From assembly GCA_002269645.1 (NCBI GenBank), contig NIVC01000746.1:124001-188000 (forward strand): a stretch of 64,000 nt of DNA. The letters are read 5' to 3'. The stretch is from Macrostomum lignano (lineage: Eukaryota). Shown piece by piece: positions 5,251-52,038 of this stretch; within the stretch, counting starts at the first letter, position 1, and each line of letters opens with the position of its first letter. Under the pieces are notes generated by a model. That model was not told the origin of the DNA. It saw only the letters and a program-made list of their open reading frames with translations, and searched no databases. A program made the position numbers and the translations under genes.

Positions 5251-5999
5251 TAATAAGTTCTCAATGATGCAAATAGGAGGTTTAAGGCGGCCAATGTACG
5301 CTAAATTCCTAGAAGAGATTTCGGATCTACAGAAGATATAATTCTCCGACACTAGTAGAGTTAGAGAAGCACAGTTGAACCAATCGAATTGACGCACGGA
5401 ATTCAGTGCATAGTGTTCACTCGCAGATCCTAGCAATGGGACTCGAGAATGTAGGAATGGGAATCTAGCAGGGGGATTAATATCTAAGCTGGGTGGATTT
5501 CAGTCGCCCGGATTTGCGATATATCTAATAGTAATAATAGGCAGACAGGCTGAGCAGCCATGAGCGGGGCTGCATAAATTATCGACGCTTGCAAACGCAA
5601 AAAAGAATATTATATTATTGCCGATGAGCCATAAAAATACAGCGAAATATTCCGTCTCCCTATAGGCCAAGGGAAACTGGGTGAGGATTTTAGCAGATAA
5701 ATTTTTCCCAGACTGGGGTTTCATATTGAAACAGTGCTTTAATATTTTATTAATAGCAGCTGTTCTCAATTGAACTGAAGCACAGCTAAATCTCACAAGT
5801 CTGTCTTTAAACCAACGAAATTCTAAATGAGCAAAAATGTCAGAGCCAGCATCCTTACTGACTCATCGCGATTTGGGGTCGATATTGAACCATTTTGCAA
5901 GGGCACTTTATAGCTCGTAATGACGTCGGTAATATATTCTTTCGCAACAATCTCATCAGTAAGGACTTAAAATTAGACCTTTTGTCCATTTTTCCTTCA

Positions 6000-7237: not shown

Positions 7238-8674
7238 GTATTGCTATTTATGGAGAAAACTGACTAAGACTAAGGTAAAGAGTGTTCCGAAATTCAAACG
7301 TGCTATTTCTTTCTCCGTAAAGACTATAGAAAAGGTTAGATCAGTAGACAAGAACAATAACTGCAAAGCATATGCGAAAGTCAAACTCATAAAAAAACTG
7401 GTGAAGACATAAAAACCCATTCTAGTAACGATAAAAATACTTGGATTTGGACAATCTAGACTGGTAGACCCCTAACCTGAGAAGGTAGGTTGCGTGCAAA
7501 CTGTTAAAATCAACATGAAAATACAGACAAGTCCAACACAGCAATGAGCCATCGTACAAAAGACTCAGCAAGCCTGTGGGTTTTGGACTCTTAATCAAAT
7601 AAACGGGCCAACTCGTTTTTTTCCAATATTCGTAGAAAGCTAAATGACGAATGGAAAGCAAATAAGAAAAGACAGTCCGATTCCAAAGCAAGCACAAGAG
7701 CTCGATTTGGCAGCTTAATGAGCTGTATGGGGGGAGGTCATTGAGAACGAGTGGCAGGCAGAATGGGAGACACTCAGCTGAAAAACAATAGTTACAGGAC
7801 CGATCCGCAGTTAAACAGTAAGGAGAAATGGGGAGCAGAAGCCGACTAAATAGGGGGGGGGGGCAGAGGAAATTGAAGAGGGAGGGTAGGATCGGATTTT
7901 TTGGTTTGGTCTCGTCGTGGCGAGGAGGAGACGGGGGAGCAATGCCAGGCGAGTCACTCCAAAAGTAATACAAACGGTCGCAGCATTGGCTGAAGATAAG
8001 AGAGAGCAGCGAGAGACGAGACCGAGAGCAGGAGCAGTTGAGGGGAGGACTTCCAATGCGCACGGGCAGCCAATGAATGAGGCGAAATGGTGGGAGAGGG
8101 AGGGAACAGAAATAAGGGCTTAAAGTTATATAGCTTCAAAGCTCCTCATTGCAAGCTTTGGCCAGAGGGTAGGAGCTGAAGGAATGAGTCAGGGATGGGG
8201 TGGGCCGCCTCGGGTGAGTGGAGAATGATAGGAGGAAGGGAAGGACAATATAGGGGGGCAGGGCCAAGTATTTTCAGGAGGAGGAGGGGGTGGGTGCTCC
8301 GCGCTTGGAGGGCTCCTGCCGGCCCGACCAACCCCCGCGTCACCCTCCTCGCCTCCCAAAAACAGTGGGCCGAGACGAATAAGCCCCCCCACCACCCCAT
8401 TCCTCCGTTCAGTTCTGTTCCGTTCCAAATCTGTCCGAGGCTAAACCAGAGCCCACCCCACTCCAATCCTCCGTTCTTCCCCTCCATAGTCCTCTGCCTG
8501 TTCGTCCTTAGTCAGGATAATAATTTTCTCTCCCTCTTATAAGCCAAGCCAACACTGAGGCACAGACATGGCCGAGTTCAGCAGTTGTTGAACAAAGCGA
8601 ACCTCCGTCCTGTTTACACCCTGACCAGACGCGGGTCAACTGGACAGAATAAAAAACACAAAAGCGCTGCAATC

Positions 8675-9525
8675 ATGATGCTTCGAGCCGAATGCACCCT
8701 GATCAGCTGCATAGCCCTGCTAACGCCTCAGCTATTCGTGCATTTGCCTCTGCGAGCCTACATCGAGTACGGACTATGGCCTGTCCTAGTTCAACTAGCC
8801 GGCATACTGGTTCTAGTGCAGCCGTTAGTGTTCTGCGAATTAGCGCTGGGCCAGCGAAGTCAGTTTGGCCCAGTGAAATGCTGGTGCTTTGGCCCGGCTT
8901 GGAAAGGCATCGGCCTGCTGATGCTCACCTGCAGCGCGCTAGACCTATTGGCTACCAATGCCGACGTGCTGGATCATCTGCAGCGGCACCACAACATCGG
9001 TGGCTTACAATACACGGCTTATTTTCAGCTAGCCCTGTGGCTAGGCGTACTGCTACCTGTGCTAACCTGGTGGCCAAAGTATGCCAGCAAACTGTGGGTC
9101 CTCGGCTCCCTCTTGTGCATCGGCGCCCTCTGCGCCGTGGCCGCTCGCACACTGTCTCTGGGCCACTCTGAGGCCGCTCTCCAACGCCTTTGGCAACTGT
9201 CAGCTAAACTGCCAGATAGCCTGCTAGACCTGCTGCGAGCCTCACTACTGCCCTACCTGTACGCCTGCGGCACAGGAGCGCTAATAGCGCTGGGCAGTTA
9301 CAGGAAGCCGCGAACCAACGCATTCCTAGACTCCGGCCTAACAGTTGGCCTAGTATTTCTGTTGCACGCGCTCTACACTGTGTCAACTAGCGCATTGGTT
9401 ATGCAATTCTGTCAGGGACATCCGGCTTTATTTGGCGACGCAGCTTCTCCAGCATCGGCAATTGACGCTTCTGGTGCGGCACCTGCGCCAGCTAGTAGCT
9501 CTAACGGCACCTGTCAGATGCCTCG
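8675..9525 (+). CDS. Divergent SLC6 (sodium:neurotransmitter symporter)-like gene, exon 1, nested antisense in eIF5B intron 3
   Basis: PLVFCELALGQ...GPVKCW...PAWKGIG matches the SLC6 TM2/TM3 signature and GALIALGSYRK matches the TM6-7 signature. Donor CG|gtgagg at 9526. The start is taken as the first in-frame ATG; further upstream exons cannot be excluded. Confidence 0.75.
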
Positions 9526-10651
9526 GTGAGGACTGAGGATTCCTACATGGCTAGTAGAGCCACAAGTTTGGGACCTGACTGACACGTCCGCTAGTCTCTT
9601 TTTTCTCTTTTTGGGACAAATATTTGAACTCCTTTCCAGCTTCCTTCCTGCCCACCGCTCGTCTCTCGCTTCCTGTCACAATCTGGCTATGCTATTGCTA
9701 GTAAAGTCGCAGAGCTGCCAAGGGATACATGGGGCGCATGGGCGAGCGAGCTGACTGAACTGGGGAAAAATTCCAAAGATATAATCCCATCCTGCAGCTC
9801 GCATAGTCACAGCCGTTTTCACCACCCCATACTGTTGGAGATTTTTTCCCTCTCGCCCCAAATATATCAAATCTCTCTCGCCCGAAGCCAGTGAAGCTGA
9901 CTAGCGTCCTAGCGATGTACTTGATCGCCAGCTAATAAAACTACGAAAAGTTCAACTTTTTCTCTAAAAAGACAGGAAGGTGGTAAGATCCTAGGAATGA
10001 TATTGTGCTGGACTATACACAAGCAGCGTTCATGTGCGTGAACTTATAGAGAACGTGAAGTTTTTTCACTTATAACTGCGCAAAACTGAACTTTTCGATT
10101 GCCGTTAGAATTCTAGTTGGCTCTTTTCCTATGCACAGTTGCGCTAAAATAGATAAAAACCTATGCTAGTCTTAAGAACTTCAGATCGCTTAGTAATACA
10201 CAATAAGCAGCGCGCTCAGATGAAGAGAATGAAGCTTTAGTAAGGACCAGTTGCTTCAGGCTGAAAGTCAAAGATAGGAGATTGGATAGTGGGTAAGTCA
10301 GTGTTATTCTTCAGTTTCTGACCCAAGGGAGTTAGTTGTCTGTCAAGTGTCGAATTACTGAAGTTTCTAGCATAGTGCTGGAATCCCAGGAGCTTTGATA
10401 AGACACCAGGGGAAAGGAAAGTTGACAGACCGAACTAAACATAACGAATGCAAGAAGTGGCTGCAGCTCACTGGTTGGACGACAGGACAAGAACTAAAAT
10501 CAATTTTTTTCAAAGCAAACAAACTCAATGATATAGAGCATAGAGTACGTAGACAACTTTGGCTACATATTAACGTGAAGTTTCGTTGTGCTAAAAGTAA
10601 TTAGAAAGTCCCAGCTGACTTAACCAACCCACCGGAATTCGCTTTCTGCAG

Positions 10652-11958
10652 CTACAACGTCAGACTGCCAACCGTGCCTTCAGCCAGCGCCAATCAACCT
10701 GGCTGGGCGATCGCTCCGCCAGAGGCCGACGATCGAGCCGGTGACGATGTCCGAGTCTACCTGGAGCTGTTGGAAGGCTTGCCAACTAACATGATCTCGC
10801 CAAAAATTTGGCTCTGGTTTTGGCGCAGCGCTCTTGGCTGGCTATTCCTAACTAGAATGCTGGTACGCGCCGACGCTTGGGTGCGCGCCGTATCTGACAA
10901 ATTTCGCGGCTGTCAGAGCCTTCGTAGGCGACAATGGACTGCGCGTCTACTAGCTAGTCTAATTGTGTGCACCTTTGGCGCCGGCTTGGGCTTTGTGCAG
11001 CAGCACTTCAAGCAGAATCTCAGCCTGCCAGATCTGTACCGAATGTCAACTGTGCGTTGGCTGCCTCTGCTGCTGACGGCTCTGGCCTGTCTAGCTGTGG
11101 CTCACGGCTACGGAGGCGTCCGCTTCATCAAGGAGGTTGGCGGCGGGGTAGCCCTCCGGCCCTGGTTCCTAGTGCTGGTCGGCTTTGTCACGCCAGGCCT
11201 GGCCATTGCACTAGCCGGTCTCCGCATGCACGTCAGTATCCAGGCGCTACTGTGGCCCAGCGCTGGCAATCTGTTTTACCGCATCATCGGGCCGTCCATA
11301 CAGGTGCCCAACTATGCTAACCTACTGCTAGCCGTAGCCGCCTTTCTATTCCTACTGGCTGGCCTGTTTAGCCCGCTGATCTGGCACGGCCTGTGCCGGA
11401 GGCAGCGCTGCATAGATCTGGTGCAGCCGACAAAGAGCTGGCAGGGCGAACAGTTGCACAGGCCTGGAGGTCCCGGAGACGGCATCGACGGCAGCACCGG
11501 AGACATGGCATCGGAGGATTCGGCCAACGGTACCAATGGAGGCGGCGGAGTCATGGGCGGCATGATCGGCAGTGGCAGCGGCGGTGGAGGCGGCTATGGC
11601 GGAGGCGGCGGCATGGGTGGCGGCGATTTCTTAGTGCGAGACCTCGGCGCTACAACCATCGGCAATGAGAGTCCGGTGATGACGCACACAATGCGCCAAC
11701 AGCACCAACAGCAGCAGCAATATCAAGCTGCTACCGCGGTGAAATTGGCAAATCCTATGCTGCCGCCACCGTCTAACGATATTGAGCCGCCCTTGCCGCC
11801 GCCTCCGCCGCCAGCGGCAGCCGCTCTAATGTACACTAACGCCAAGCCGACGCAGCCTGTGAGACCCATGGTAGAGCAGCAGCAGCAGCAGCAATACGCA
11901 ATGACAGCCGTAGTCTCTTCAACGGCTTCCTCCATGTCTTCTACTCCGCCACCGCCCC
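10652..11958 (+). CDS. SLC6-like gene exon 2 (C-terminal TM helices, then a G/Q/P-rich tail)
   Basis: ctttctgcag|C completes the split codon CG|C. Several hydrophobic helices are followed by poly-G, poly-Q and poly-P tracts. Confidence 0.7.
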
Positions 11959-12027
11959 TCCGCCGTCAATTCTGCCGATGTCAACAATAGCTGGCACAGC
12001 GGACACCTACGGAACTGTGCGGTTCCA

Positions 12028-27270: not shown

Positions 27271-27504
27271 TTGCCTAAACTGCACTATGCATTGCCTAAA
27301 CTGCTCTATGCATTGCCTAAACTGCTCTATGCATTGCCTAAACTGCTCTATGCATTGCCTAAACTGCACTATGCAGTGCCTAAACTGCTCTATGCATTGC
27401 CTAAACTGCTCTATGCATTGCCTAAACTGCACTATGCATTGCCTAAACTGCACTATGCATTGCCTAAACTGCTCTATGCATTGCCTAAACTGCTCTATGC
27501 ATTG
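27271..27504. repeat. 21-bp minisatellite, left block (about 11 copies)
   Basis: Unit tgcattgcctaaactgc(t/a)cta. Confidence 0.97.
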
Positions 27505-29028
27505 TTAGGATTCTTGAACGCTAACGAGTGCGTCATTGGCAAAAGCACGAGTGCGCGAAGCGCACGAGTGCTCTTTGCCATAGACGCACGAGTTGTCGTG
27601 CATGAATCTCATTCTTATTTGATTCTTTCATTTTACATTCTGCCCAAAAAAGGTTATAATTGATATTACTATAGACATTACCCGCTGCTAGCGGGGTGCG
27701 GGGGCAGAGCCCCCGCTGGGGGCGTGGGGCGAAGCCCCCACATTTTAACCATAGACAAAATCAATCTTGCACGCTGGAGATGGTGAGGGGAGGGGGTAAC
27801 GAAAGGAGATTACAATTGAAAGCTAGTTGCCACTATAAAAACAAAGCAATGGTTTGTTTCGCCATATTATGAAGTTGCGAGCGATTGACATAATAAATGA
27901 TAAAGCCTTTCATGCCGCCAATCTTACCATGAAGAGCATTTGCAACGCTTTCCTTCGATCTGGAGGAAGAGTGAAGCACTACGATGCTATTGAGAGTGAC
28001 GACCTGAAGAAGCTCGGTAAATACTTCGATCGTTCGAATCCGGTGCGTCTTCAAGAGGAAGTATACTTTAACATCATTTATTACTATGGGAATAGAGGCC
28101 GTGAATGGTTGCGTGGTTTGAGGTTTGATCGGTTTTGTGAGAAGCGGCTCGCCAATGGACTCTACGCGATTGAGCTTGTTCAGGGAGATTCAAAGAATCT
28201 ACATGGTTCTATCAGCGTCGCCGTCTTGGTTGACAACAAGCAAGCGTTGATGGTGTCAAAGGGAGATTCTGCCAAATGCCCAGTTGAGGCGTTCAGACTG
28301 TACAAGCAAAAGGTCACCGAAGTTGAAGGATGGAACGGAGTGGACTTCTTTCTGCGACCAAACGCTAACTTTCGTTCATCTGGTAAGTGGTACAGCAAGA
28401 GTGCAGTAGGAGTCAACACCCTTGGGCCTCTGATGAAGAAAATTTCTACGTCCGCCGGATTGTCCAAGCCATACACTGCGCATTGTGTGCGTGCAACTGT
28501 AATCACAGAACTTCACGACGCTGGATTTAATGTCGAAACTATCGCTAAAGTGACTGGCCACAAGCGAGGTGCATCCGTCGAGCGCTACATTCGACGAGGG
28601 AATAAACGAGAGCAAGCGATCTGTGCTATGAGCCATCAACTAACGGCTGCCGTGGAGGTGGCTACTACGGCCGACCCTCAAGTTGTAGGCACTGAGGCAA
28701 GTGACCCAGTTGACGTTATCAACGATCCTACGTCGGGCTCGGTGCGCTGTGTGCGAGTTATTCCGGAAAATCGGAAGAATTTGAAGATTCGAGCCAATGG
28801 TGACACCAACGTCATTGAATTTGTATTTGAGTAGCATCTGATCGCAAGCGAAAAACTAGTAATGATATTAACCAATTTTCACTCGTTATTTTCTTGTTGT
28901 CTAAAAATAAAGTGCAATCCTGCACGTAAGATGCATTAGACCTAAAGGATAATTTGCCATAGACAACATCAATTCTGCACGCTTGGGCGTGCCAGATCAG
29001 CAATCCTGCACGCAGAATCAAATAAGAA
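27505..29028 (+). mobile_element. Crypton-like tyrosine-recombinase DNA element inserted in the 21-bp array
   Basis: Interrupts the array in register with TG on both sides. Imperfect terminal inverted repeat, internal 17-bp inverted pair (27610-27626 and 29014-29030), 62-bp hairpin at 27528-27589, and a single YR ORF. Confidence 0.8.
27869..28834 (+). CDS. Tyrosine recombinase, Crypton/DUF3504-like (321 aa from the first ATG)
   Basis: Catalytic motifs in the correct order: R (GNRGRE), K (DSKN), HxxR (HCVR), H (TGHK), Y (VERY). The family assignment is from recalled motif similarity and needs an HMM search. An in-frame TAA at 27836 suggests the N-terminus may be truncated. Confidence 0.88.
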   Translation: MKLRAIDIINDKAFHAANLTMKSICNAFLRSGGRVKHYDAIESDDLKKLGKYFDRSNPVRLQEEVYFNIIYYYGNRGREWLRGLRFDRFCEKRLANGLYAIELVQGDSKNLHGSISVAVLVDNKQALMVSKGDSAKCPVEAFRLYKQKVTEVEGWNGVDFFLRPNANFRSSGKWYSKSAVGVNTLGPLMKKISTSAGLSKPYTAHCVRATVITELHDAGFNVETIAKVTGHKRGASVERYIRRGNKREQAICAMSHQLTAAVEVATTADPQVVGTEASDPVDVINDPTSGSVRCVRVIPENRKNLKIRANGDTNVIEFVFE

Positions 29029-30410
29029 TGCCTAAACTGCTCTATGCATTGCCGAAACTGCACTATGCATTGCCTAAACTGCTCTATGCATTGCCTAAAC
29101 TGCTCTATGCATTGCCTAAACTGCTCTATGCATTGCCTAAACTGCACTATGCATTGCCTAAACTGCACTATGCAGTGCCTAAACTGCACTATGCATTGCC
29201 TAAACTGCTCTATGCATTGCCTAAACTGCTCTATGCATTGCCTAAACTGCTCTATGCATTGCCTAAACTGCCCTATGCATTGCCTAAACTGCTCTATGCA
29301 TTGCCTAAACTGCTCTATGCATTGCCTAAACTGCACTATGCAGTGCCTAAACTGCACTATGCATTGCCTAAACTGCCCTATGCATTGCCTAAACTGCTCT
29401 ATGCATTGCCGAAACTGCACTATGCATTGCCTAAACTGTTGTATGCATTGCCGAAACTGCACTATGCATTGCCTAAACTGTTGTATGCATTGCCTAAACT
29501 GCACTATGCATTGCCTAAACTGCACTATGCATTGCCTAAACTGCACTATGCATTGCCTAAACTGCCCTATGCATTGCCTAAACTGCCCTATGCATTGCCT
29601 AAACTGCTCTATGCATTGCCTAAACTGCCCTATGCATTGCCTAAACTGCTCTATGCATTGCCTAAACTGCCCTATGCATTGCCTAAACTGCCCTATGCAT
29701 TGCCTAAACTGCTCTATGCATTGCCCAAACTGTTGTATGCATTGCCTAAACTGTTGTATGCATTGCCTAAACTGCCCTATGCATTGCCTAAACTGCCCTA
29801 TGCATTGCCTAAACTGCCCTATGCAGTGCCTAAACTGCCCTATGCATTGCCTAAACTGCCCTATGCATTGCCTAAACTGCCCTATGCATTGCCTAAACTG
29901 CTCTATGCATTGCCTAAACTGCCCTATGCATTGCCTAAACTGCTCTATGCATTGCCTAAACTGCCCTATGCATTGCCTAAACTGCCCTATGCATTGCCTA
30001 AACTGCTCTATGCATTGCCCAAACTGTTGTATGCATTGCCTAAACTGTTGTATGCATTGCCTAAACTGCCCTATGCATTGCCTAAACTGCCCTATGCATT
30101 GCCTAAACTGCACTATGCAGTGCCTAAACTGCCCTATGCATTGCCTAAACTGCCCTATGCATTGCCTAAACTGCCCTATGCATTGCCTAAACTGCACTAT
30201 GCAGTGCCTAAACTGCCCTATGCATTGCCTAAACTGCACTATGCATTGCCGAAACTGCACTATGCATTGCCTAAACTGCTCTATGCATTGCCTAAACTGC
30301 ACTATGCATTGCCTAAACTGCACTATGCATTGCCGAAACTGCAGTATGCATTGCCTAAACTGCACTATGCATTGCCTAAACTGCCCTATGCAGTGCCTAA
30401 ACTGCTCTAT
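29029..30410. repeat. 21-bp minisatellite, right block (about 66 copies)
   Basis: Same unit and orientation as 27271-27504, with a variable triplet (ctc/cac/ccc/ttg). Confidence 0.98.
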
Positions 30411-31442
30411 AATAACTTGACTCAACATTGCCTCAATGCATCGCCGAAACACAATTAAGAATGTCACAAACTCGCTGATTAATAATTAAAGACTCCGAGA
30501 CAAAAAAAATGTAAACAAAAAATGTTCGCTACACGAAGCGAGCTGAAAATTCTCTCAGCAAAAAAAAACAGCAAAACGAAATGAGAAAACAAATAGGCAT
30601 AGCCGACCCCCCGTTCCCTGTCCATCACGCAGGCATCCGCCCGGCAGCAGGGGCGTTCGAAATCCTTTTAAATTAGCTCATAATCGATTGTTTCACCCAC
30701 TGGCTGGGGGAGGGGAGGCCCGAAGCTTAGAGAGCTTCATCAGCGAAGTGGCGAGCCGCTACAGGACACACACAGTGAGCTGAGTGGAACACAAGGGAGA
30801 GAAAAATCTGCTCCCATTCGATCCATTTCTCCCAATGAAATTTTGCTTAGGGAGGCCGGGTAGACGCGATGAAGATGCTCAGAGAGACTGACAGAGAGAG
30901 GAAAACACACGCGGAGCATTAGAAATCAATAAAACTAACTGCCAATGTCAATGCAATAGACAGGCATACAGAGTAGTAGTGCATTCTACAGCACACGACT
31001 GACTAATGTGTTCATATAGTACTCAACTTATTTACATGTACAATCCCTTCTCAAGTTCACGAGAGAGATTGATTATTAAAACAAGCAGTGAGAATAGTGC
31101 AAGCTTTCAGATCTGTTCACACAGCACTGCTACAGGCAAATTGCATTAGGATCAACTAAGGATCAGAGAGCAACCCCGCCCGTAAGAATTCTACGACAGC
31201 CGCTCTCAGCTGCAGCGGTCCAGCTTTTAACTAACGATGCGTGGCGCGACACTCGCCCTAACTTGATTAACCCAAGCTAATAACAGGGCCCGGAGGTTTG
31301 AAAGCAACTAGCAAAGACCGCCATTGCCGTCCCAACTTTTGAAGTCGGGCTTTTCATAAGCATCAACACTTTCTGCATTTTTTTAACGACTAGGTAGCCT
31401 GGCGCCTAAAACAGGGACAATCCGAAGCGAAGGCAGATCACA

Positions 31443-31700
31443 GGGGCCGCAGCCCAGCGGTCTAACGCGTAGTCGCATTAATTTGGGGCTGAATTGGAAT
31501 CTCGGCTTGGCTCTGCTCGTGCAATTAACGGCCTTGAGGGCCAATCCCCAAGGTACAGTGAAGTGTACATGCCTAACGATAATATAAAGTTAGGACTGCT
31601 GTACACTCCTGTGTGACTGCGTACGTATCCGCGCGCTTGCGTGCCTGCTCAGGGGAGTCGGCGGAACGGGCAGCAATGCCTCTCGCCGGTTGCGACAACT
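31443..31700 (+). mobile_element. tRNA-derived SINE, copy 2
   Basis: ggggccgcagcccagcgg head (A-box-like) and a body homologous to 21797-22075. Confidence 0.75.
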
Positions 31701-31821
31701 AAGGCAGAGACTCATCTGCCTCCAAAAAACGGGGGCAATCTAAAGCTAAAGGCAGCAGAAGAGTCTGGCATCAAAAAGTTCAAAAAACACTACAAGCCAA
31801 CAGAAAAAAACTATTGCCTAC

Positions 31822-50808: not shown

Positions 50809-52038
50809 CAACAACAACAACAAAATACGCTGTCATGATGGTAAAAGTCAGCGTCACAGGGCGCGCTTCATGGCTTGGGCGCGAACAAAGGCCGCGCCAC
50901 CGGCAGTGTCCGGGGCGCCGGCGTCAGCCAGCAGACAGTCGACATAACGCCGAGTTCGCGCTTGACCTCGCCGGTAGGGTGCCTGCAGCGTGAGCAGCAG
51001 CACCTCCTGCACCGGCTGTGGGCAGTACGACTCGGCGCGGATGAGATGGCCTGCGAGCTGGAGTCGCCGACGGCGCAGTAGATCACTTGGACGTGGCAGG
51101 CCAGCGCGGCGATAGAGTGCCGCGTTGGTGACTCGCTCGACGCCGATGTTGAAGGCGGCGCGCAGCAGACCAGCGTGCGCCGCATCGACTTGCTGTTCGA
51201 GTGAGTCCGTCAGCGTCCAGGTCTCGGCGTTGTACAGCAGGACGGTCTCGATTACCGCCTGGAACAGCGCCGCCCTCTGGCGGTCCGGTAGGGCCTCGGA
51301 CTGCAGGACTGCCCTCACAGAACGAAAGGCAGCCCAGGCAAGCCCGCGGCGGCGTCGCAGGTCCTCGCGAGCGTCTGGAACCAGACCGCCGAGGTAGACG
51401 AACTGCTGACATCGCGGGAGTTCGGTCGCCTGCCCGTCAGCGCCTCGGCAAAATATTGCAGCCTCGATTTCGTCCGGCACGCAGAGCACAACGGTCTTCT
51501 GCGTGTTGACCACCAGGCCGACACTCGCCGCAACGGCAACCAGCCTGTCCAGCTGCCGTTGGGCGCCCTCGACGGTCGAGGACAGCAGGGCGAGGTCGTC
51601 GGCGTAGCCAAGCACGCTGAGCCTCTTCTCCGGTTGACGTCGACCCACGCGTCGCTGCAGCAGAAAACCGTCGTCGTTGGTAGGAAGAGCAGTCCGCAGC
51701 ACCCAGTCAAGCACCAGGACGAACAGAAACGGCGCCAGCGTATCTCCCTGAAGCACTCCGGAGGATGTCTCAAAGGAGTCCGATAGGCCGTCCGGTGTTG
51801 TCACAGCAGCTGTCGTATCACGGTACATCGCCATGACGGCGGAGATCAGCTGCTCAGGCACGTTGTACGCGCGGAGCACCATTGGAAGCACGGCTCTGAC
51901 AACCGAGTCGAATGCCTTCTTGAAATCAATAAAGATTAAAATCAGTATCGACTGACGAATCCGCGCCTCCTCGATGACTCGGCGAAGAGCCAGGATCTGC
52001 GCCACTGTGCCGCGATGGGGCCGGAAGCCGTTACAAAA
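50809..52038 (-). mobile_element. 5'-truncated RTE-like non-LTR retrotransposon, recent insertion
   Basis: Uninterrupted RT ORF 50854-52032 (NGFRP, FIDFKKAFDSV, GVLQGDTLAPFLF, YADD), (TTG)n 3' tail, and 13-bp TSD attgcattacaaa at 50796-50808 and 52039-52051. Confidence 0.95.

What the first reader, a model, noticed from the sequence alone, without database searches (positions are those of the whole stretch)
27271..30410. Catalytically complete tyrosine recombinase element inserted in register into a 21-bp minisatellite, with ends that rebuild a YR-type core site
Seen: the array stops at ...tatgcatTG (27504) and resumes at TGcctaaac (29029). Removing 27505-29030 restores a perfect monomer. Joining the element ends gives AAGAAT-GTTAGG-ATTCTT, a 6-bp inverted pair around a 6-bp spacer. 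Read outward, both ends say AAGAAT(G)CCTAA(A)C, and CCTAAAC is part of every array monomer. The ORF keeps R, K, HxxR, H and Y. Established: YRs act on inverted binding elements flanking a 6-8-bp spacer, and Cryptons move through circles without true TSDs. Inference: this is a minisatellite-targeting Crypton-like system in which the array is a multi-copy landing pad (about 77 potential sites), or in which recombinase activity expands the array. Caveat: the N-terminus may be lost (in-frame TAA at 27836).
Basis: partly seen in the sequence, partly recalled or inferred. Interest (0 to 1): 0.85.

Follow-up and report, generated by a model that had tools for sequence, protein, structure and literature searches.

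The report
Defective Crypton transposon in intronic minisatellite
A 1.5-kb broken copy of a recently active tyrosine-recombinase ("Crypton"-type) transposon of the flatworm Macrostomum lignano landed by chance in a 21-bp minisatellite; it does not target that repeat, but its family has an undescribed, conserved hairpin-forming structure spanning the joined ends.

Summary
The sequence facts hold. A 1,526-bp insert (27505-29030) splits a 21-bp array exactly in phase, and its ORF keeps the catalytic R, K, HxxR, H and Y.

Of 9 independent insertions of this family and a sister family in Macrostomum lignano, only 2 lie in tandem repeats. That equals the 18-24% tandem-repeat content of the sampled DNA, and the two arrays are unrelated.

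All 9 insertions share one thing. The left flank ends in S-A-N-T-G, and the element always ends in (G/C)AATG. This is the known Crypton rule of a short, near-identical donor and target motif with no target-site duplication.

The window copy is non-autonomous. [quoted passage not shown] Another copy with the same deletion sits at a different locus, so the deleted form has itself moved.

The AAGAAT-GTTAGG-ATTCTT core is real (P about 0.01) but is not conserved in related families.

What is conserved, in 9 families, is an internal segment complementary to both termini. The joined ends would therefore lie inside a roughly 140-nt hairpin or palindrome (z -11 to -18, with compensatory changes). This resembles the internal complementary region of DIRS retrotransposons. 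I found no description of it for Cryptons.

The parts
27243..27504 (+). Left part of the 21-bp minisatellite (unit TGCCTAAACTGCTCTATGCAT). Its last bases, CATTG (27500-27504), are the target motif S-A-N-T-G.
   Evidence: TRF; 11 monomers in phase; sequence.
27505..29030 (+). Non-autonomous, internally deleted copy (1,526 bp) of a 1.98-kb Crypton-type tyrosine-recombinase transposon. Its ends are TTAGGATTCTTGAAC...CAAATAAGAATG.
   Evidence: 99.8% identical to the full-length copy in L001. Four other copies have the same ends and different flanks.
27505..27543 (+). Left terminus: TTAG plus the left arm (27509-27543). The arm starts with a degenerate copy of the subterminal motif (GATTCTTGAACGC).
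   Evidence: Inverted repeat I1. 88% conserved with family 2.
27544..27573 (+). Hairpin tip: a GC stem-loop GCGCGAAGCGC flanked by direct CACGAGTG repeats. Similar tips, CGAG(G/T)-GC stem-CGAG(G/T), occur in the metagenomic families.
   Evidence: Folds; sequences.
27574..27608 (+). Left internal complementary region: inverse complement of the left terminus (35 nt, 77%).
   Evidence: I1.
27610..27626 (+). Right internal complementary region: perfect 17-nt inverse complement of the right terminus, abutting the left one with 1 nt between them.
   Evidence: I2, 17/17; only two exact occurrences in the window. It covaries with the right terminus between families.
27662..27732 (+). G-run-rich segment of about 71 bp (GGGG/CCCCC hairpins). 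It is present in 4 of 5 copies and absent from L001.
27749..27775 (+). Subterminal repeat unit CCATAGAC-N-TCAATCTTGCACGC. Further copies lie at 28914-28926, 28957-28983 and 29000-29013. These are probable recombinase or accessory binding sites.
   Evidence: D1-D3, D5. The family-2 equivalent, ATTCCTGCACG, occurs 7 or more times.
27849..27872 (+). Native start codon (27849), the deletion junction at the TGGTTT microhomology (27850-27855), and the resulting premature TGA (27870-27872).
   Evidence: Alignment of five copies: 454-bp gap, columns 348-801, shared by the window and L005; translation.
27869..28834 (+). Residual ORF (321 aa from the internal ATG) covering only the catalytic domain. It includes R 28094, K 28193, HxxR 28481-28492, H 28559 and Y 28586.
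29014..29030 (+). Right terminus AGAATCAAATAAGAATG. The final AATG is the donor copy of the crossover motif.
29029..30410 (+). Right part of the 21-bp minisatellite (65.8 copies), in phase with the left part.
22555..31818 (-). Host context: a roughly 9.3-kb, minisatellite-filled intron of the eIF5B gene (minus strand). The element lies antisense in it.
   Evidence: tblastn of eIF5B proteins: exons at 34388-33063, 32016-31819, 22554-22168, 3420-3196, 2459-2076 and 1862-1641.

Best explanation
The insert is a dead-on-its-own copy of a young, low-copy Crypton-type DNA transposon of Macrostomum lignano.

Intact copies are 1.98 kb. They carry one intron-less ORF of 478 aa and no other gene. The ORF encodes a Cre-like tyrosine recombinase with two domains, a core-binding domain and a catalytic domain of the DUF3504 / CryptonA kind.

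The element inserts by recombination between its joined ends (...AAGAATG|TTAGGATTC...) and a genomic site ending in S-A-N-T-G. Exchange is confined to the TG or its edges. The target pentamer stays on the left, the element's own AATG stays on the right, and nothing is duplicated.

The 21-bp array was hit only because every monomer carries CATTG (and CAATG on the other strand), and because about a fifth of this genome is tandem repeat.

The window copy lost 454 bp between two TGGTTT repeats. That removed most of the core-binding domain and shifted the frame. It was then moved in trans by recombinase from intact copies.

The cis-acting site is probably not the 6-6-6 mini-palindrome. It is more likely a larger structure. 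Bases 27574-27626 are the inverse complement of the left and right termini placed side by side, so the circle junction lies inside a 139-bp imperfect palindrome or hairpin, next to a 2-3-nt bulge. Direct copies of an 11-13-bp subterminal motif flank it.

Shown: family membership, copy structure, termini, the target rule, absence of duplication, trans-mobilisation of the deleted form, and conservation of the complementary region.

Inferred: the circular intermediate, which strand(s) are exchanged, and what the palindrome does.
For: Host and family. The ORF is 100% identical to M. lignano BOX15_Mlig018289g4. Its homologues are mostly stand-alone proteins of 350-530 aa.

Protein. Pfam Phage_integrase is above threshold. 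DUF3504 is above threshold for family 2 and just below it for family 1. The AlphaFold model matches Cre over about 350 columns (E 1e-8, TM 0.64), and also the QRICH1 DUF3504 domain, XerH, IntI and Tn1549 Int.

Copies. Five family-1 copies are 99-100% identical, with identical ends and five different flanks. Four independent family-2 insertions were found.

Target rule. The left flanks are ATTG, ATTG, AATG, AATG, AATG, AATG, ACTG, ATTG and ATTG, each preceded by G or C. The right ends are constant. Five of nine have a mismatch at N, so this is not a target-site duplication.

Virtual empty sites. The periodicity of the 21-bp array here and of a 65-bp array in L009 reconstructs the sites before insertion. 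Neither shows a duplication.

Trans-mobilisation. The same 454-bp deletion occurs in the window and in L005, at different loci.

DNA-based movement. All family-2 copies keep their intron.

Published precedent. An active Chlamydomonas Crypton ends in CACCG and targets CAYCG (PMC9977147). Short terminal direct repeats are regarded as the recombination substrate (PMC3212892; PMC8969392).

Palindrome. Free energy is -43 to -60 kcal/mol and z is -11 to -18 in five families. Between families 1 and 2 there are 7 compensatory pair changes and 0 broken pairs out of 54. The right internal complementary region matches the right terminus at 17/17, 15/15 and 16/16. The same layout occurs in 4 more metagenomic families, with no match on the 5'-side control in those loci.
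Against: No circle-junction read, excision footprint or real empty allele was seen. These tools cannot search M. lignano reads or the whole assembly.

Only 9 insertions were sampled, all reached through annotated proteins.

Classical tyrosine recombinases exchange strands 6-8 bp apart and need homology across that interval. Here homology is 2-5 bp and lies on one side only. No copy shows the variable ends that a heteroduplex overlap would leave.

Family 1 falls just under the Pfam DUF3504 threshold.

No phylogeny with curated Repbase Cryptons could be built.
Confidence: 0.85

Rival explanations
1. One reading: a minisatellite-targeting Crypton. The 21-bp array is a dedicated multi-copy landing pad, or the recombinase expands the array.
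For: The insertion is exactly in phase. Every monomer carries a usable CATTG/CAATG, 152 of the 1,489 sites in the window. In this copy the right flank CCTAA mirrors the left end TTAGG. A family-2 copy also sits in phase in a tandem repeat.
Against: Four of five family-1 copies and three of four family-2 insertions are outside any array. The two arrays that were hit are unrelated in sequence. Two of nine equals the 18-24% tandem-repeat background. The 21-mer is absent from the nine loci held when it was searched. CCTAA is absent from the other right flanks. Phase preservation follows from any insertion without a duplication. Nothing links the recombinase to array growth.
Confidence: 0.03
2. A DIRS-like retroelement derivative. 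The element is copied through RNA and single-stranded cDNA by a reverse transcriptase supplied in trans. The internal complementary region restores and joins the ends as in DIRS-1, and the recombinase then integrates the circle.
For: The layout matches the DIRS rule. The left and right internal complementary regions are inverse complements of the two extremities and abut at the circle junction. Integration is at a short identical sequence without duplication (PMC3266345; PMC7192593). The perfect match between the right terminus and its complementary region is what templated synthesis would give. Kojima and Jurka could not exclude a DIRS origin for CryptonA.
Against: There is no RT, RNase H, GAG or methyltransferase in the 1.98-kb element. 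There are no long inverted terminal repeats. All five family-2 copies retain an intron. Relatives are almost all stand-alone recombinases. The few long relatives are chimeric gene models with LINE, Harbinger or zinc-finger parts, not DIRS-type polyproteins. The left terminus and its complementary region match only 77%, so it is not templated.
Confidence: 0.05
3. A cut-and-paste element moved by some other transposase, making a 2-bp TG target-site duplication. In this reading the recombinase ORF is cargo or a resolvase.
For: TG flanks both ends in all nine insertions. Tec elements combine a DDE transposase with a tyrosine recombinase (PMC3212892).
Against: The element has no second ORF and no terminal inverted repeats. 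The conserved S and A upstream of TG mirror the element's own 3' end in 9 of 9 insertions (chance about 1e-5 for A alone at 28% A, my arithmetic). The rule fits the experimentally observed Crypton behaviour.
Confidence: 0.03
4. A domesticated, immobile DUF3504 host gene that happens to lie in a repeat.
For: The DUF3504 similarity, and the structural match to QRICH1.
Against: There are multiple near-identical copies with sharp common ends in unrelated flanks. Deletion derivatives sit at different loci. The catalytic residues are all intact. The window copy lies antisense inside an intron.
Confidence: 0.01

Closest known systems
Crypton DNA transposons, especially the animal CryptonA / DUF3504 lineage (Goodwin 2003; Kojima & Jurka 2011, PMC3212892; Glomhoppers, PMC13465315)
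   Same: It has a single tyrosine-recombinase ORF, no RT, no long terminal repeats, low copy number and non-autonomous deletion derivatives. It has no C-terminal GCR1_C domain. The element terminus carries a short motif that is near-identical to the target, and there is no true target-site duplication. This is the same logic as CryptonF-1_cRei, which ends in CACCG and targets CAYCG (PMC9977147).
   Different: Kojima and Jurka found no terminal repeats at all in animal Cryptons and did not list Platyhelminthes among host phyla. The curation guide names the short direct repeat as the only structural hallmark (PMC8969392). Here the boundaries are base-precise, and there is also an internal region complementary to both termini plus subterminal motif arrays. 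The element is small (1.9-2.6 kb).
DIRS1-like tyrosine-recombinase retrotransposons (termini plus internal complementary regions)
   Same: Two adjacent internal segments are inverse complements of the left and right extremities and meet at the circle junction. Integration is at a 2-4-nt sequence shared with the target and makes no duplication.
   Different: It has no RT/RNase H/MT/GAG and no long inverted terminal repeats. The complementary regions sit about 30 nt from the left terminus, forming a hairpin with it, rather than near the 3' end. An intron is retained, so the element moves as DNA.
Folded single-strand recombination sites of bacterial tyrosine recombinases (integron attC; CTX-phage attP(+))
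   Same: It is an imperfect hairpin of about 140 nt. The exchange point lies inside the stem beside a small unpaired bulge. Very little target homology is needed, and the junctions are precise and invariant, as expected from exchange of a single strand.
   Different: This is purely a structural analogy. No single-stranded intermediate is shown, the host is eukaryotic, and the protein is closest in fold to Cre rather than IntI or XerCD.
Tn916/Tn1549 and CTnDOT integrases (heterology-tolerant tyrosine recombinases)
   Same: It shows low target specificity, presumed circular-intermediate logic, and tolerance of non-identical sequence at the crossover. Tn1549 Int is the best, though weak, PDB sequence hit.
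   Different: Those elements carry variable coupling sequences at their ends. Here both ends are invariant in 9 insertions.

Membership tests
Crypton (tyrosine-recombinase DNA transposon) | Encodes a tyrosine recombinase with the catalytic R-K-H-R-H/W-Y set | tested here: met
   R256, K289, H385 and R388 are invariant in 18 homologues; H411 and Y420 are present. Pfam Phage_integrase is above cut-off. The fold is Cre-like. The window copy keeps these residues but lacks the N-terminal domain.
Crypton (tyrosine-recombinase DNA transposon) | No reverse transcriptase or other transposase in the element | tested here: met
   The intact copies are 1.98 kb with a single ORF, and Pfam shows only recombinase domains.
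Crypton (tyrosine-recombinase DNA transposon) | No long terminal repeats; a short terminal motif repeated, near-identically, in the adjacent flank and the same in all copies | tested here: met
   (G/C)AATG at the 3' end against S-A-N-T-G at the left flank in 9 of 9 insertions.
Crypton (tyrosine-recombinase DNA transposon) | No true target-site duplication | tested here: met
   Two virtual empty sites were reconstructed from array periodicity. The N position mismatches in 5 of 9 insertions.
Crypton (tyrosine-recombinase DNA transposon) | Excision or integration through an extrachromosomal circle | not testable with these tools
   No read data or empty alleles were reachable. The attempt through the neighbouring eIF5B gene failed.
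CryptonA / DUF3504 lineage | Recombinase domain matches Pfam DUF3504 | tested here: inconclusive
   Family 2 scores 39.4 bits against the 29.7 cut-off, so it passes. Family 1 scores 24-25.5 bits, below the cut-off. There is a structural hit to QRICH1 9hjt_H at E 1e-6.
CryptonA / DUF3504 lineage | Groups with curated CryptonA elements in a recombinase phylogeny | not tested
   No Repbase sequences were available.
DIRS1-like retrotransposons | RT/RNase H (and usually GAG and MT) ORFs | tested here: not met
   They are absent from the element. Long relatives are chimeric models without a DIRS architecture.
DIRS1-like retrotransposons | Long inverted terminal repeats | tested here: not met
   Only a 6-bp offset inverted match between the ends, in family 1 alone.
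DIRS1-like retrotransposons | Internal complementary regions matching both extremities and meeting at the circle junction | tested here: met
   27574-27608 matches 27509-27543, and 27610-27626 matches 29014-29030. The layout is conserved in 9 families, with covariation between families 1 and 2.
   One of five family-1 copies is in the 21-mer array. The 21-mer is absent from the nine loci held when it was searched.
Domesticated DUF3504 host gene | Single orthologous locus, usually with degenerate catalytic residues | tested here: not met
   It is multi-copy, has defined ends, and its catalytic residues are intact.
Folded single-strand recombination site (attC / CTX attP type) | Recombination uses a folded single strand and exchanges one strand only | not testable with these tools
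   Only the hairpin potential and the invariant junctions are shown.

The most novel reading that the evidence does not exclude
A clade of recombinase-only (Crypton-type) elements uses a DIRS-style internal complementary region. The two termini are brought together on an internal splint, or the circle junction is presented as a folded hairpin or cruciform, and a single strand is exchanged at the bulge beside AAT(G/A)|T(T)AGGA.

This would explain the invariant ends and the need for only 2-5 nt of one-sided target homology. These elements would then be the DNA-transposon counterpart, either ancestor or derivative, of the DIRS terminus system. They would also be a eukaryotic parallel to integron attC and CTX-phage recombination.
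Probability: 0.2. Interest if true: 0.8.

Novelty: new variant of a known kind. Interest (0 to 1): 0.5.

Why it matters
The headline claim, a transposon that homes to a minisatellite, is not real. The insertion is an ordinary event in a repeat-rich intron.

What remains useful is that Cryptons are among the least understood eukaryotic transposons. Animal Cryptons were reported to have no terminal structure at all. Here the ends are defined to the base, and a degenerate target rule emerges that matches the one active Crypton observed experimentally. A trans-mobilised deletion derivative is also present.

In addition, a conserved hairpin-forming region complementary to both termini links recombinase-only elements to the DIRS architecture. 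That gives a concrete, mutable cis-element for testing how eukaryotic tyrosine-recombinase transposons choose and join their ends. It also bears on the open question of whether DIRS elements arose from Cryptons or the reverse.

Tried and rejected
1. Empty-site allele through the neighbouring gene. I searched the eIF5B first exon against the protein collection. No M. lignano eIF5B came back, so paralogous or allelic contigs could not be fetched.

2. The 21-mer in the other loci. I searched the nine loci fetched by then and found none.

3. PDB sequence search. It gave only a weak hit to Tn1549 Int (E 0.04). The structural search was needed instead.

4. I rejected it because target homology maps to S-A-N-T-G on the left and never to GTTAGG. 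The repeat is also absent from families 2 and 3.

5. The left flank of L004. It resembles the element's right end at 10 of 12 positions, which suggested insertion next to an older copy. The 1.5 kb upstream has no significant similarity to any family, so I treat it as target likeness or chance.

6. A link to reverse transcriptase among long homologues. These turned out to be chimeric gene models.

7. The shared flank strings CTATGCAWTG (window and L003) and CGGGAATGTACA (L005 and L009). They suggest some wider target preference, but nine sites are too few, so this is left open.

8. The broad metagenome scan. Many loci with enough flank lack the palindrome, so the structure belongs to a subclade and not to all DUF3504 recombinases.
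Full report
**What is in the window**

A 21-bp minisatellite (unit TGCCTAAACTGCTCTATGCAT) runs from 27243 to 27504 and from 29029 to 30410. A pattern search finds 11 + 65 monomers. The two blocks are exactly in phase once 27505-29030 (1,526 bp) is removed, with a TG shared at both junctions.

The insert holds a 326-codon ORF (27854-28834). The ORF matches Pfam Phage_integrase (2.6e-7, above cut-off) and DUF3504 (1.5e-5, just below cut-off). Its joined ends read AAGAAT-GTTAGG-ATTCTT.

**Host and context**

The ORF is 100% identical to a Macrostomum lignano protein, BOX15_Mlig018289g4. tblastn with eIF5B proteins shows that the window carries the eIF5B gene on the minus strand. Its exons lie at 34388-33063, 32016-31819, 22554-22168, 3420-3196, 2459-2076 and 1862-1641.

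The array and the insert therefore lie antisense in an intron of about 9.3 kb. Tandem repeats of period 7 or more cover 24% of the window and 18% of the 174 kb of M. lignano DNA sampled here.

**The window copy is defective**

The annotated protein is 501 aa. The likely true product is 478 aa, starting MVSLINP. The full-length copy in contig NIVC01004419.1 (locus L001) is 1,916 bp. Two others are 1,981 and 1,978 bp.

An alignment of the five copies shows that the window lacks 454 bp between two TGGTTT repeats. The native ATG at 27849 now reads ATG GTT TGT TTC GCC ATA TTA TGA. Only the catalytic domain remains as an ORF, starting from an internal ATG at 27869.

An AlphaFold model of the full protein has mean pLDDT 69.6, with the core at 80-95. 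Its best structural matches are Cre recombinase, over both domains (E 1e-8, about 350 columns). Further matches are the QRICH1 DUF3504 domain, XerH, IntI, lambda Int and Tn1549 Int. The deletion removes most of the N-terminal core-binding helices.

The catalytic residues are all retained: R 28094, K 28193, H 28481, R 28490, H 28559 and Y 28586.

A second copy, L005, carries the same 454-bp deletion at a different locus. The deleted form has therefore itself transposed, which means it was mobilised in trans. The copies are 99-100% identical, so the family is young.

**Does it target the minisatellite? No**

All five family-1 copies have identical ends, TTAGGATTCTTGAAC...CAAATAAGAATG. Their flanks all differ:

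| Copy | Left flank | Right flank |
|---|---|---|
| window | tatgcATTG | cctaaac |
| L001 | catagATTG | cattccc |
| L003 | ctatgcAATG | caaccgc |
| L004 | caaAGAATG | aacagcg |
| L005 | cggGAATG | tacatgt |

Only the window copy lies in the 21-mer.

A sister family (55% amino-acid identity, 14 annotated members, one intron) gave four independent insertions. Their left flanks end in ACAATG, CACTG, GATTG and CATTG, and the right end is a constant ...GACAATG. One of these, in L009, sits in phase in an unrelated 65-bp tandem repeat.

Two of nine insertions in tandem repeats is what an 18-24% repeat content predicts. The 21-mer occurs in none of the nine loci held when it was searched.

**The real target rule**

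In 9 of 9 insertions the left flank ends in S-A-N-T-G, and the element ends in (G/C)AATG. In five of the nine the N differs from the element's A, which mutation cannot explain at 99% or more copy identity. This is therefore donor-target microhomology and not a target-site duplication.

The two arrays act as rulers. The neighbouring units show what the site looked like before insertion (...GCATTG CCTAAAC...GGGGATTG TACACTCG). In both cases the target motif is present once and nothing is duplicated. Exchange is thus confined to the TG or its borders.

This matches what is published for Cryptons:
- Short terminal direct repeats are taken to be the recombination substrate (PMC3212892).
- A short terminal repeat that is the same in all copies is the only recognised structural hallmark (PMC8969392).
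- The one Crypton seen transposing in the laboratory ends in CACCG and targets CAYCG (PMC9977147).

The window contains 1,489 S-A-N-T-G sites, 152 of them in this array. The array is a good target by composition only.

**The proposed core site**

The 6-bp inverted pair around GTTAGG is nominally unusual (P about 0.01 by shuffling). The best equivalent in family 2 and in a third family is only 3 bp, which is the null median. No target shows any similarity to GTTAGG.

The mirror CCTAA in the right flank is peculiar to this array. TTAGG turns out to be part of a conserved left-end motif, T(T)AGGA(A)T.

**A conserved larger structure**

Inside the element, 27610-27626 is a perfect 17-nt inverse complement of the right terminus (29014-29030). 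The adjoining 27574-27608 is the inverse complement (77%) of the left terminus (27509-27543). Together they are the inverse complement of the joined ends. The circle junction would therefore lie in a 139-nt imperfect palindrome or hairpin (dG -49.9 kcal/mol, z -11). The exchange point is 17 bp up the stem, beside a 3-nt bulge.

Family 2 has the same layout (dG -54.3, z -13.3). Its inner part is 88% identical to family 1, although the proteins are only 55% identical. Between the two families there are 7 compensatory double changes and no broken pairs among 54. Five of the seven lie in the stem formed by the right terminus and a site 1.4-2 kb away.

The layout recurs in relatives at 28-43% identity from metagenome contigs:

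| Locus | Evidence |
|---|---|
| L011/L012 | junction hairpin z -14 |
| L013-15 | 15/15 match between right terminus and its internal complement; element bounds independently confirmed by flank divergence |
| L016 | 16/16 match |
| L017, L019, L020, L024 | same layout |

A control window on the 5' side of the palindrome gave no such pairing in the metagenomic loci. It gave one chance hit, in a 13.5-kb M. lignano locus. Several more distant relatives with ample flank lack the palindrome, so it marks a subclade.

Three M. lignano copies (L005, L008, L009) carry central deletions of the palindrome, as long palindromes tend to.

An 11-13-bp motif is repeated near both ends and forms the start of the left arm. 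It reads CAATCCTGCACGC in family 1 and ATTCCTGCACG in family 2.

**Comparison with known systems**

The arrangement is the rule described for DIRS1-like retrotransposons. There, left and right internal complementary regions match the two extremities and meet at a 3-bp circular junction. Integration is at an identical genomic trinucleotide without duplication, and the region is essential for DIRS-1 mobility (PMC3266345; PMC7192593).

These elements nevertheless fail the DIRS membership test on several counts:
- They have no RT, RNase H, GAG or methyltransferase.
- They have no long inverted terminal repeats.
- Family 2 keeps its intron in all copies.
- Among 4,451 homologous clusters, the best 150 are mostly stand-alone proteins of 350-530 aa. 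The long ones are chimeric gene models, not DIRS polyproteins.

They are therefore not DIRS members. They are best filed as Crypton-type, DUF3504-lineage elements with a DIRS-like terminus logic. Kojima and Jurka found no terminal repeats in animal Cryptons, did not list flatworms as hosts, and could not exclude a DIRS-Crypton relationship. My literature searches found no description of such a complementary region in Cryptons. Repbase itself could not be consulted.

**Mechanism and its uncertainties**

Most likely, intact copies make a Cre-like recombinase that joins the ends into a circle. It then recombines the junction with any S-A-N-T-G site, and the defective window copy was carried along in trans.

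One unexplained point is that classical tyrosine recombinases exchange strands 6-8 bp apart and need homology in between. Here homology is 2-5 nt and one-sided, yet both ends are invariant in nine insertions. A heteroduplex overlap should leave variable ends in about half of them.

A single-strand exchange at a folded or cruciform junction would account for this. That is how integron attC and CTX-phage attP sites work. It remains an inference, at roughly 20%.

**Verdict**

The Crypton assignment is supported. Minisatellite targeting and the specific core-site model are not supported. The insertion itself is ordinary. The family's conserved junction-spanning complementary region is the feature worth following up.

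Noticed in passing
window 1641-35015 (minus strand): The eIF5B gene spans more than 33 kb, with exons at 34388-33063, 32016-31819, 22554-22168, 3420-3196, 2459-2076 and 1862-1641. Its introns are packed with more than 25 different minisatellite arrays. No M. lignano eIF5B protein came back from the protein collection.
   Followed up: partly
window 8585-9529 and 10674-11990 (+): These ORFs have sodium:neurotransmitter symporter (SNF) similarity. They lie on the opposite strand inside the large eIF5B intron between exons 22168 and 3420, and may be a nested gene.
   Followed up: no
window 15915-18862: A 273-bp tandem repeat of 10.8 copies that TRF reports as 100% identical. It is bracketed by long TCTA (15555-15916) and CTAT (18848-19138) microsatellites. 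It is either very recent or an assembly effect.
   Followed up: no
window 50854-52005 (-): An ORF with a reverse-transcriptase domain (RVT_1, 2.3e-18). It is a retroelement fragment unrelated to the Crypton.
   Followed up: no
window 37254-37382 and 38351-38477: Two arrays of a 15/32-bp unit in inverted orientation flank a 182-aa ORF (37501-38049) that has no Pfam hit. This looks like a foldback-type element. A 26-bp array follows at 38489-38888.
   Followed up: no
window 27662-27732: A G-run / C-run segment of about 71 bp inside the Crypton (GGGGTGCGGGGGCAGAGCCCCCGCTGGGGGCGTGGGGCGAAGCCCCC). It is present in 4 of 5 copies, absent from L001, and varies in run length between copies.
   Followed up: partly
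L005 (about 5281-5319 gap), L008 about 2850, L009 about 2863: Three copies carry deletions centred on the terminal palindrome, of 39 nt, about 7 nt and about 55 nt. This is the kind of instability long palindromes show and may inactivate those copies.
   Followed up: partly
L006/L007 2540-2888: This family-2 copy appears in two contigs as the same locus. Its left end is interrupted after 43 bp by about 350 bp of extra DNA. That DNA carries further direct and inverted copies of the ATTCCTGCACG motif and a partial inverted hairpin arm.
   Followed up: no
L010 1-4017 (ENA metagenome contig): Two DUF3504 ORFs (437 and 435 aa) lie in tandem behind a 143-bp palindrome (490-632). The palindrome tip, GGACGAGTGCGAAGCACGAGTC, resembles the M. 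lignano hairpin tip. This may be a two-recombinase element or two adjacent elements.
   Followed up: partly
L003 / window left flanks; L005 / L009 targets: The window and L003 targets share CTATGCAWTG. A family-1 target (L005) and a family-2 target (L009) share CGGGAATG^TACA. This hints at target preference beyond the 5-mer, but there are too few sites to judge.
   Followed up: partly
L001 11702-11925: The right flank of the full-length copy is a short element of about 220 bp with inverted terminal repeats (ATTCCCTAGATGGGCCACTCT ... AGAGTGGCCCATCTAGGGAAT). The Crypton has inserted at its edge.
   Followed up: no
L013 vs L015 right ends: Two metagenome contigs share the left flank and the element but diverge after ...CAGAAT (GA|aattg against TA|tgata). 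This could be an assembly chimera or a rearrangement at the right junction.
   Followed up: no
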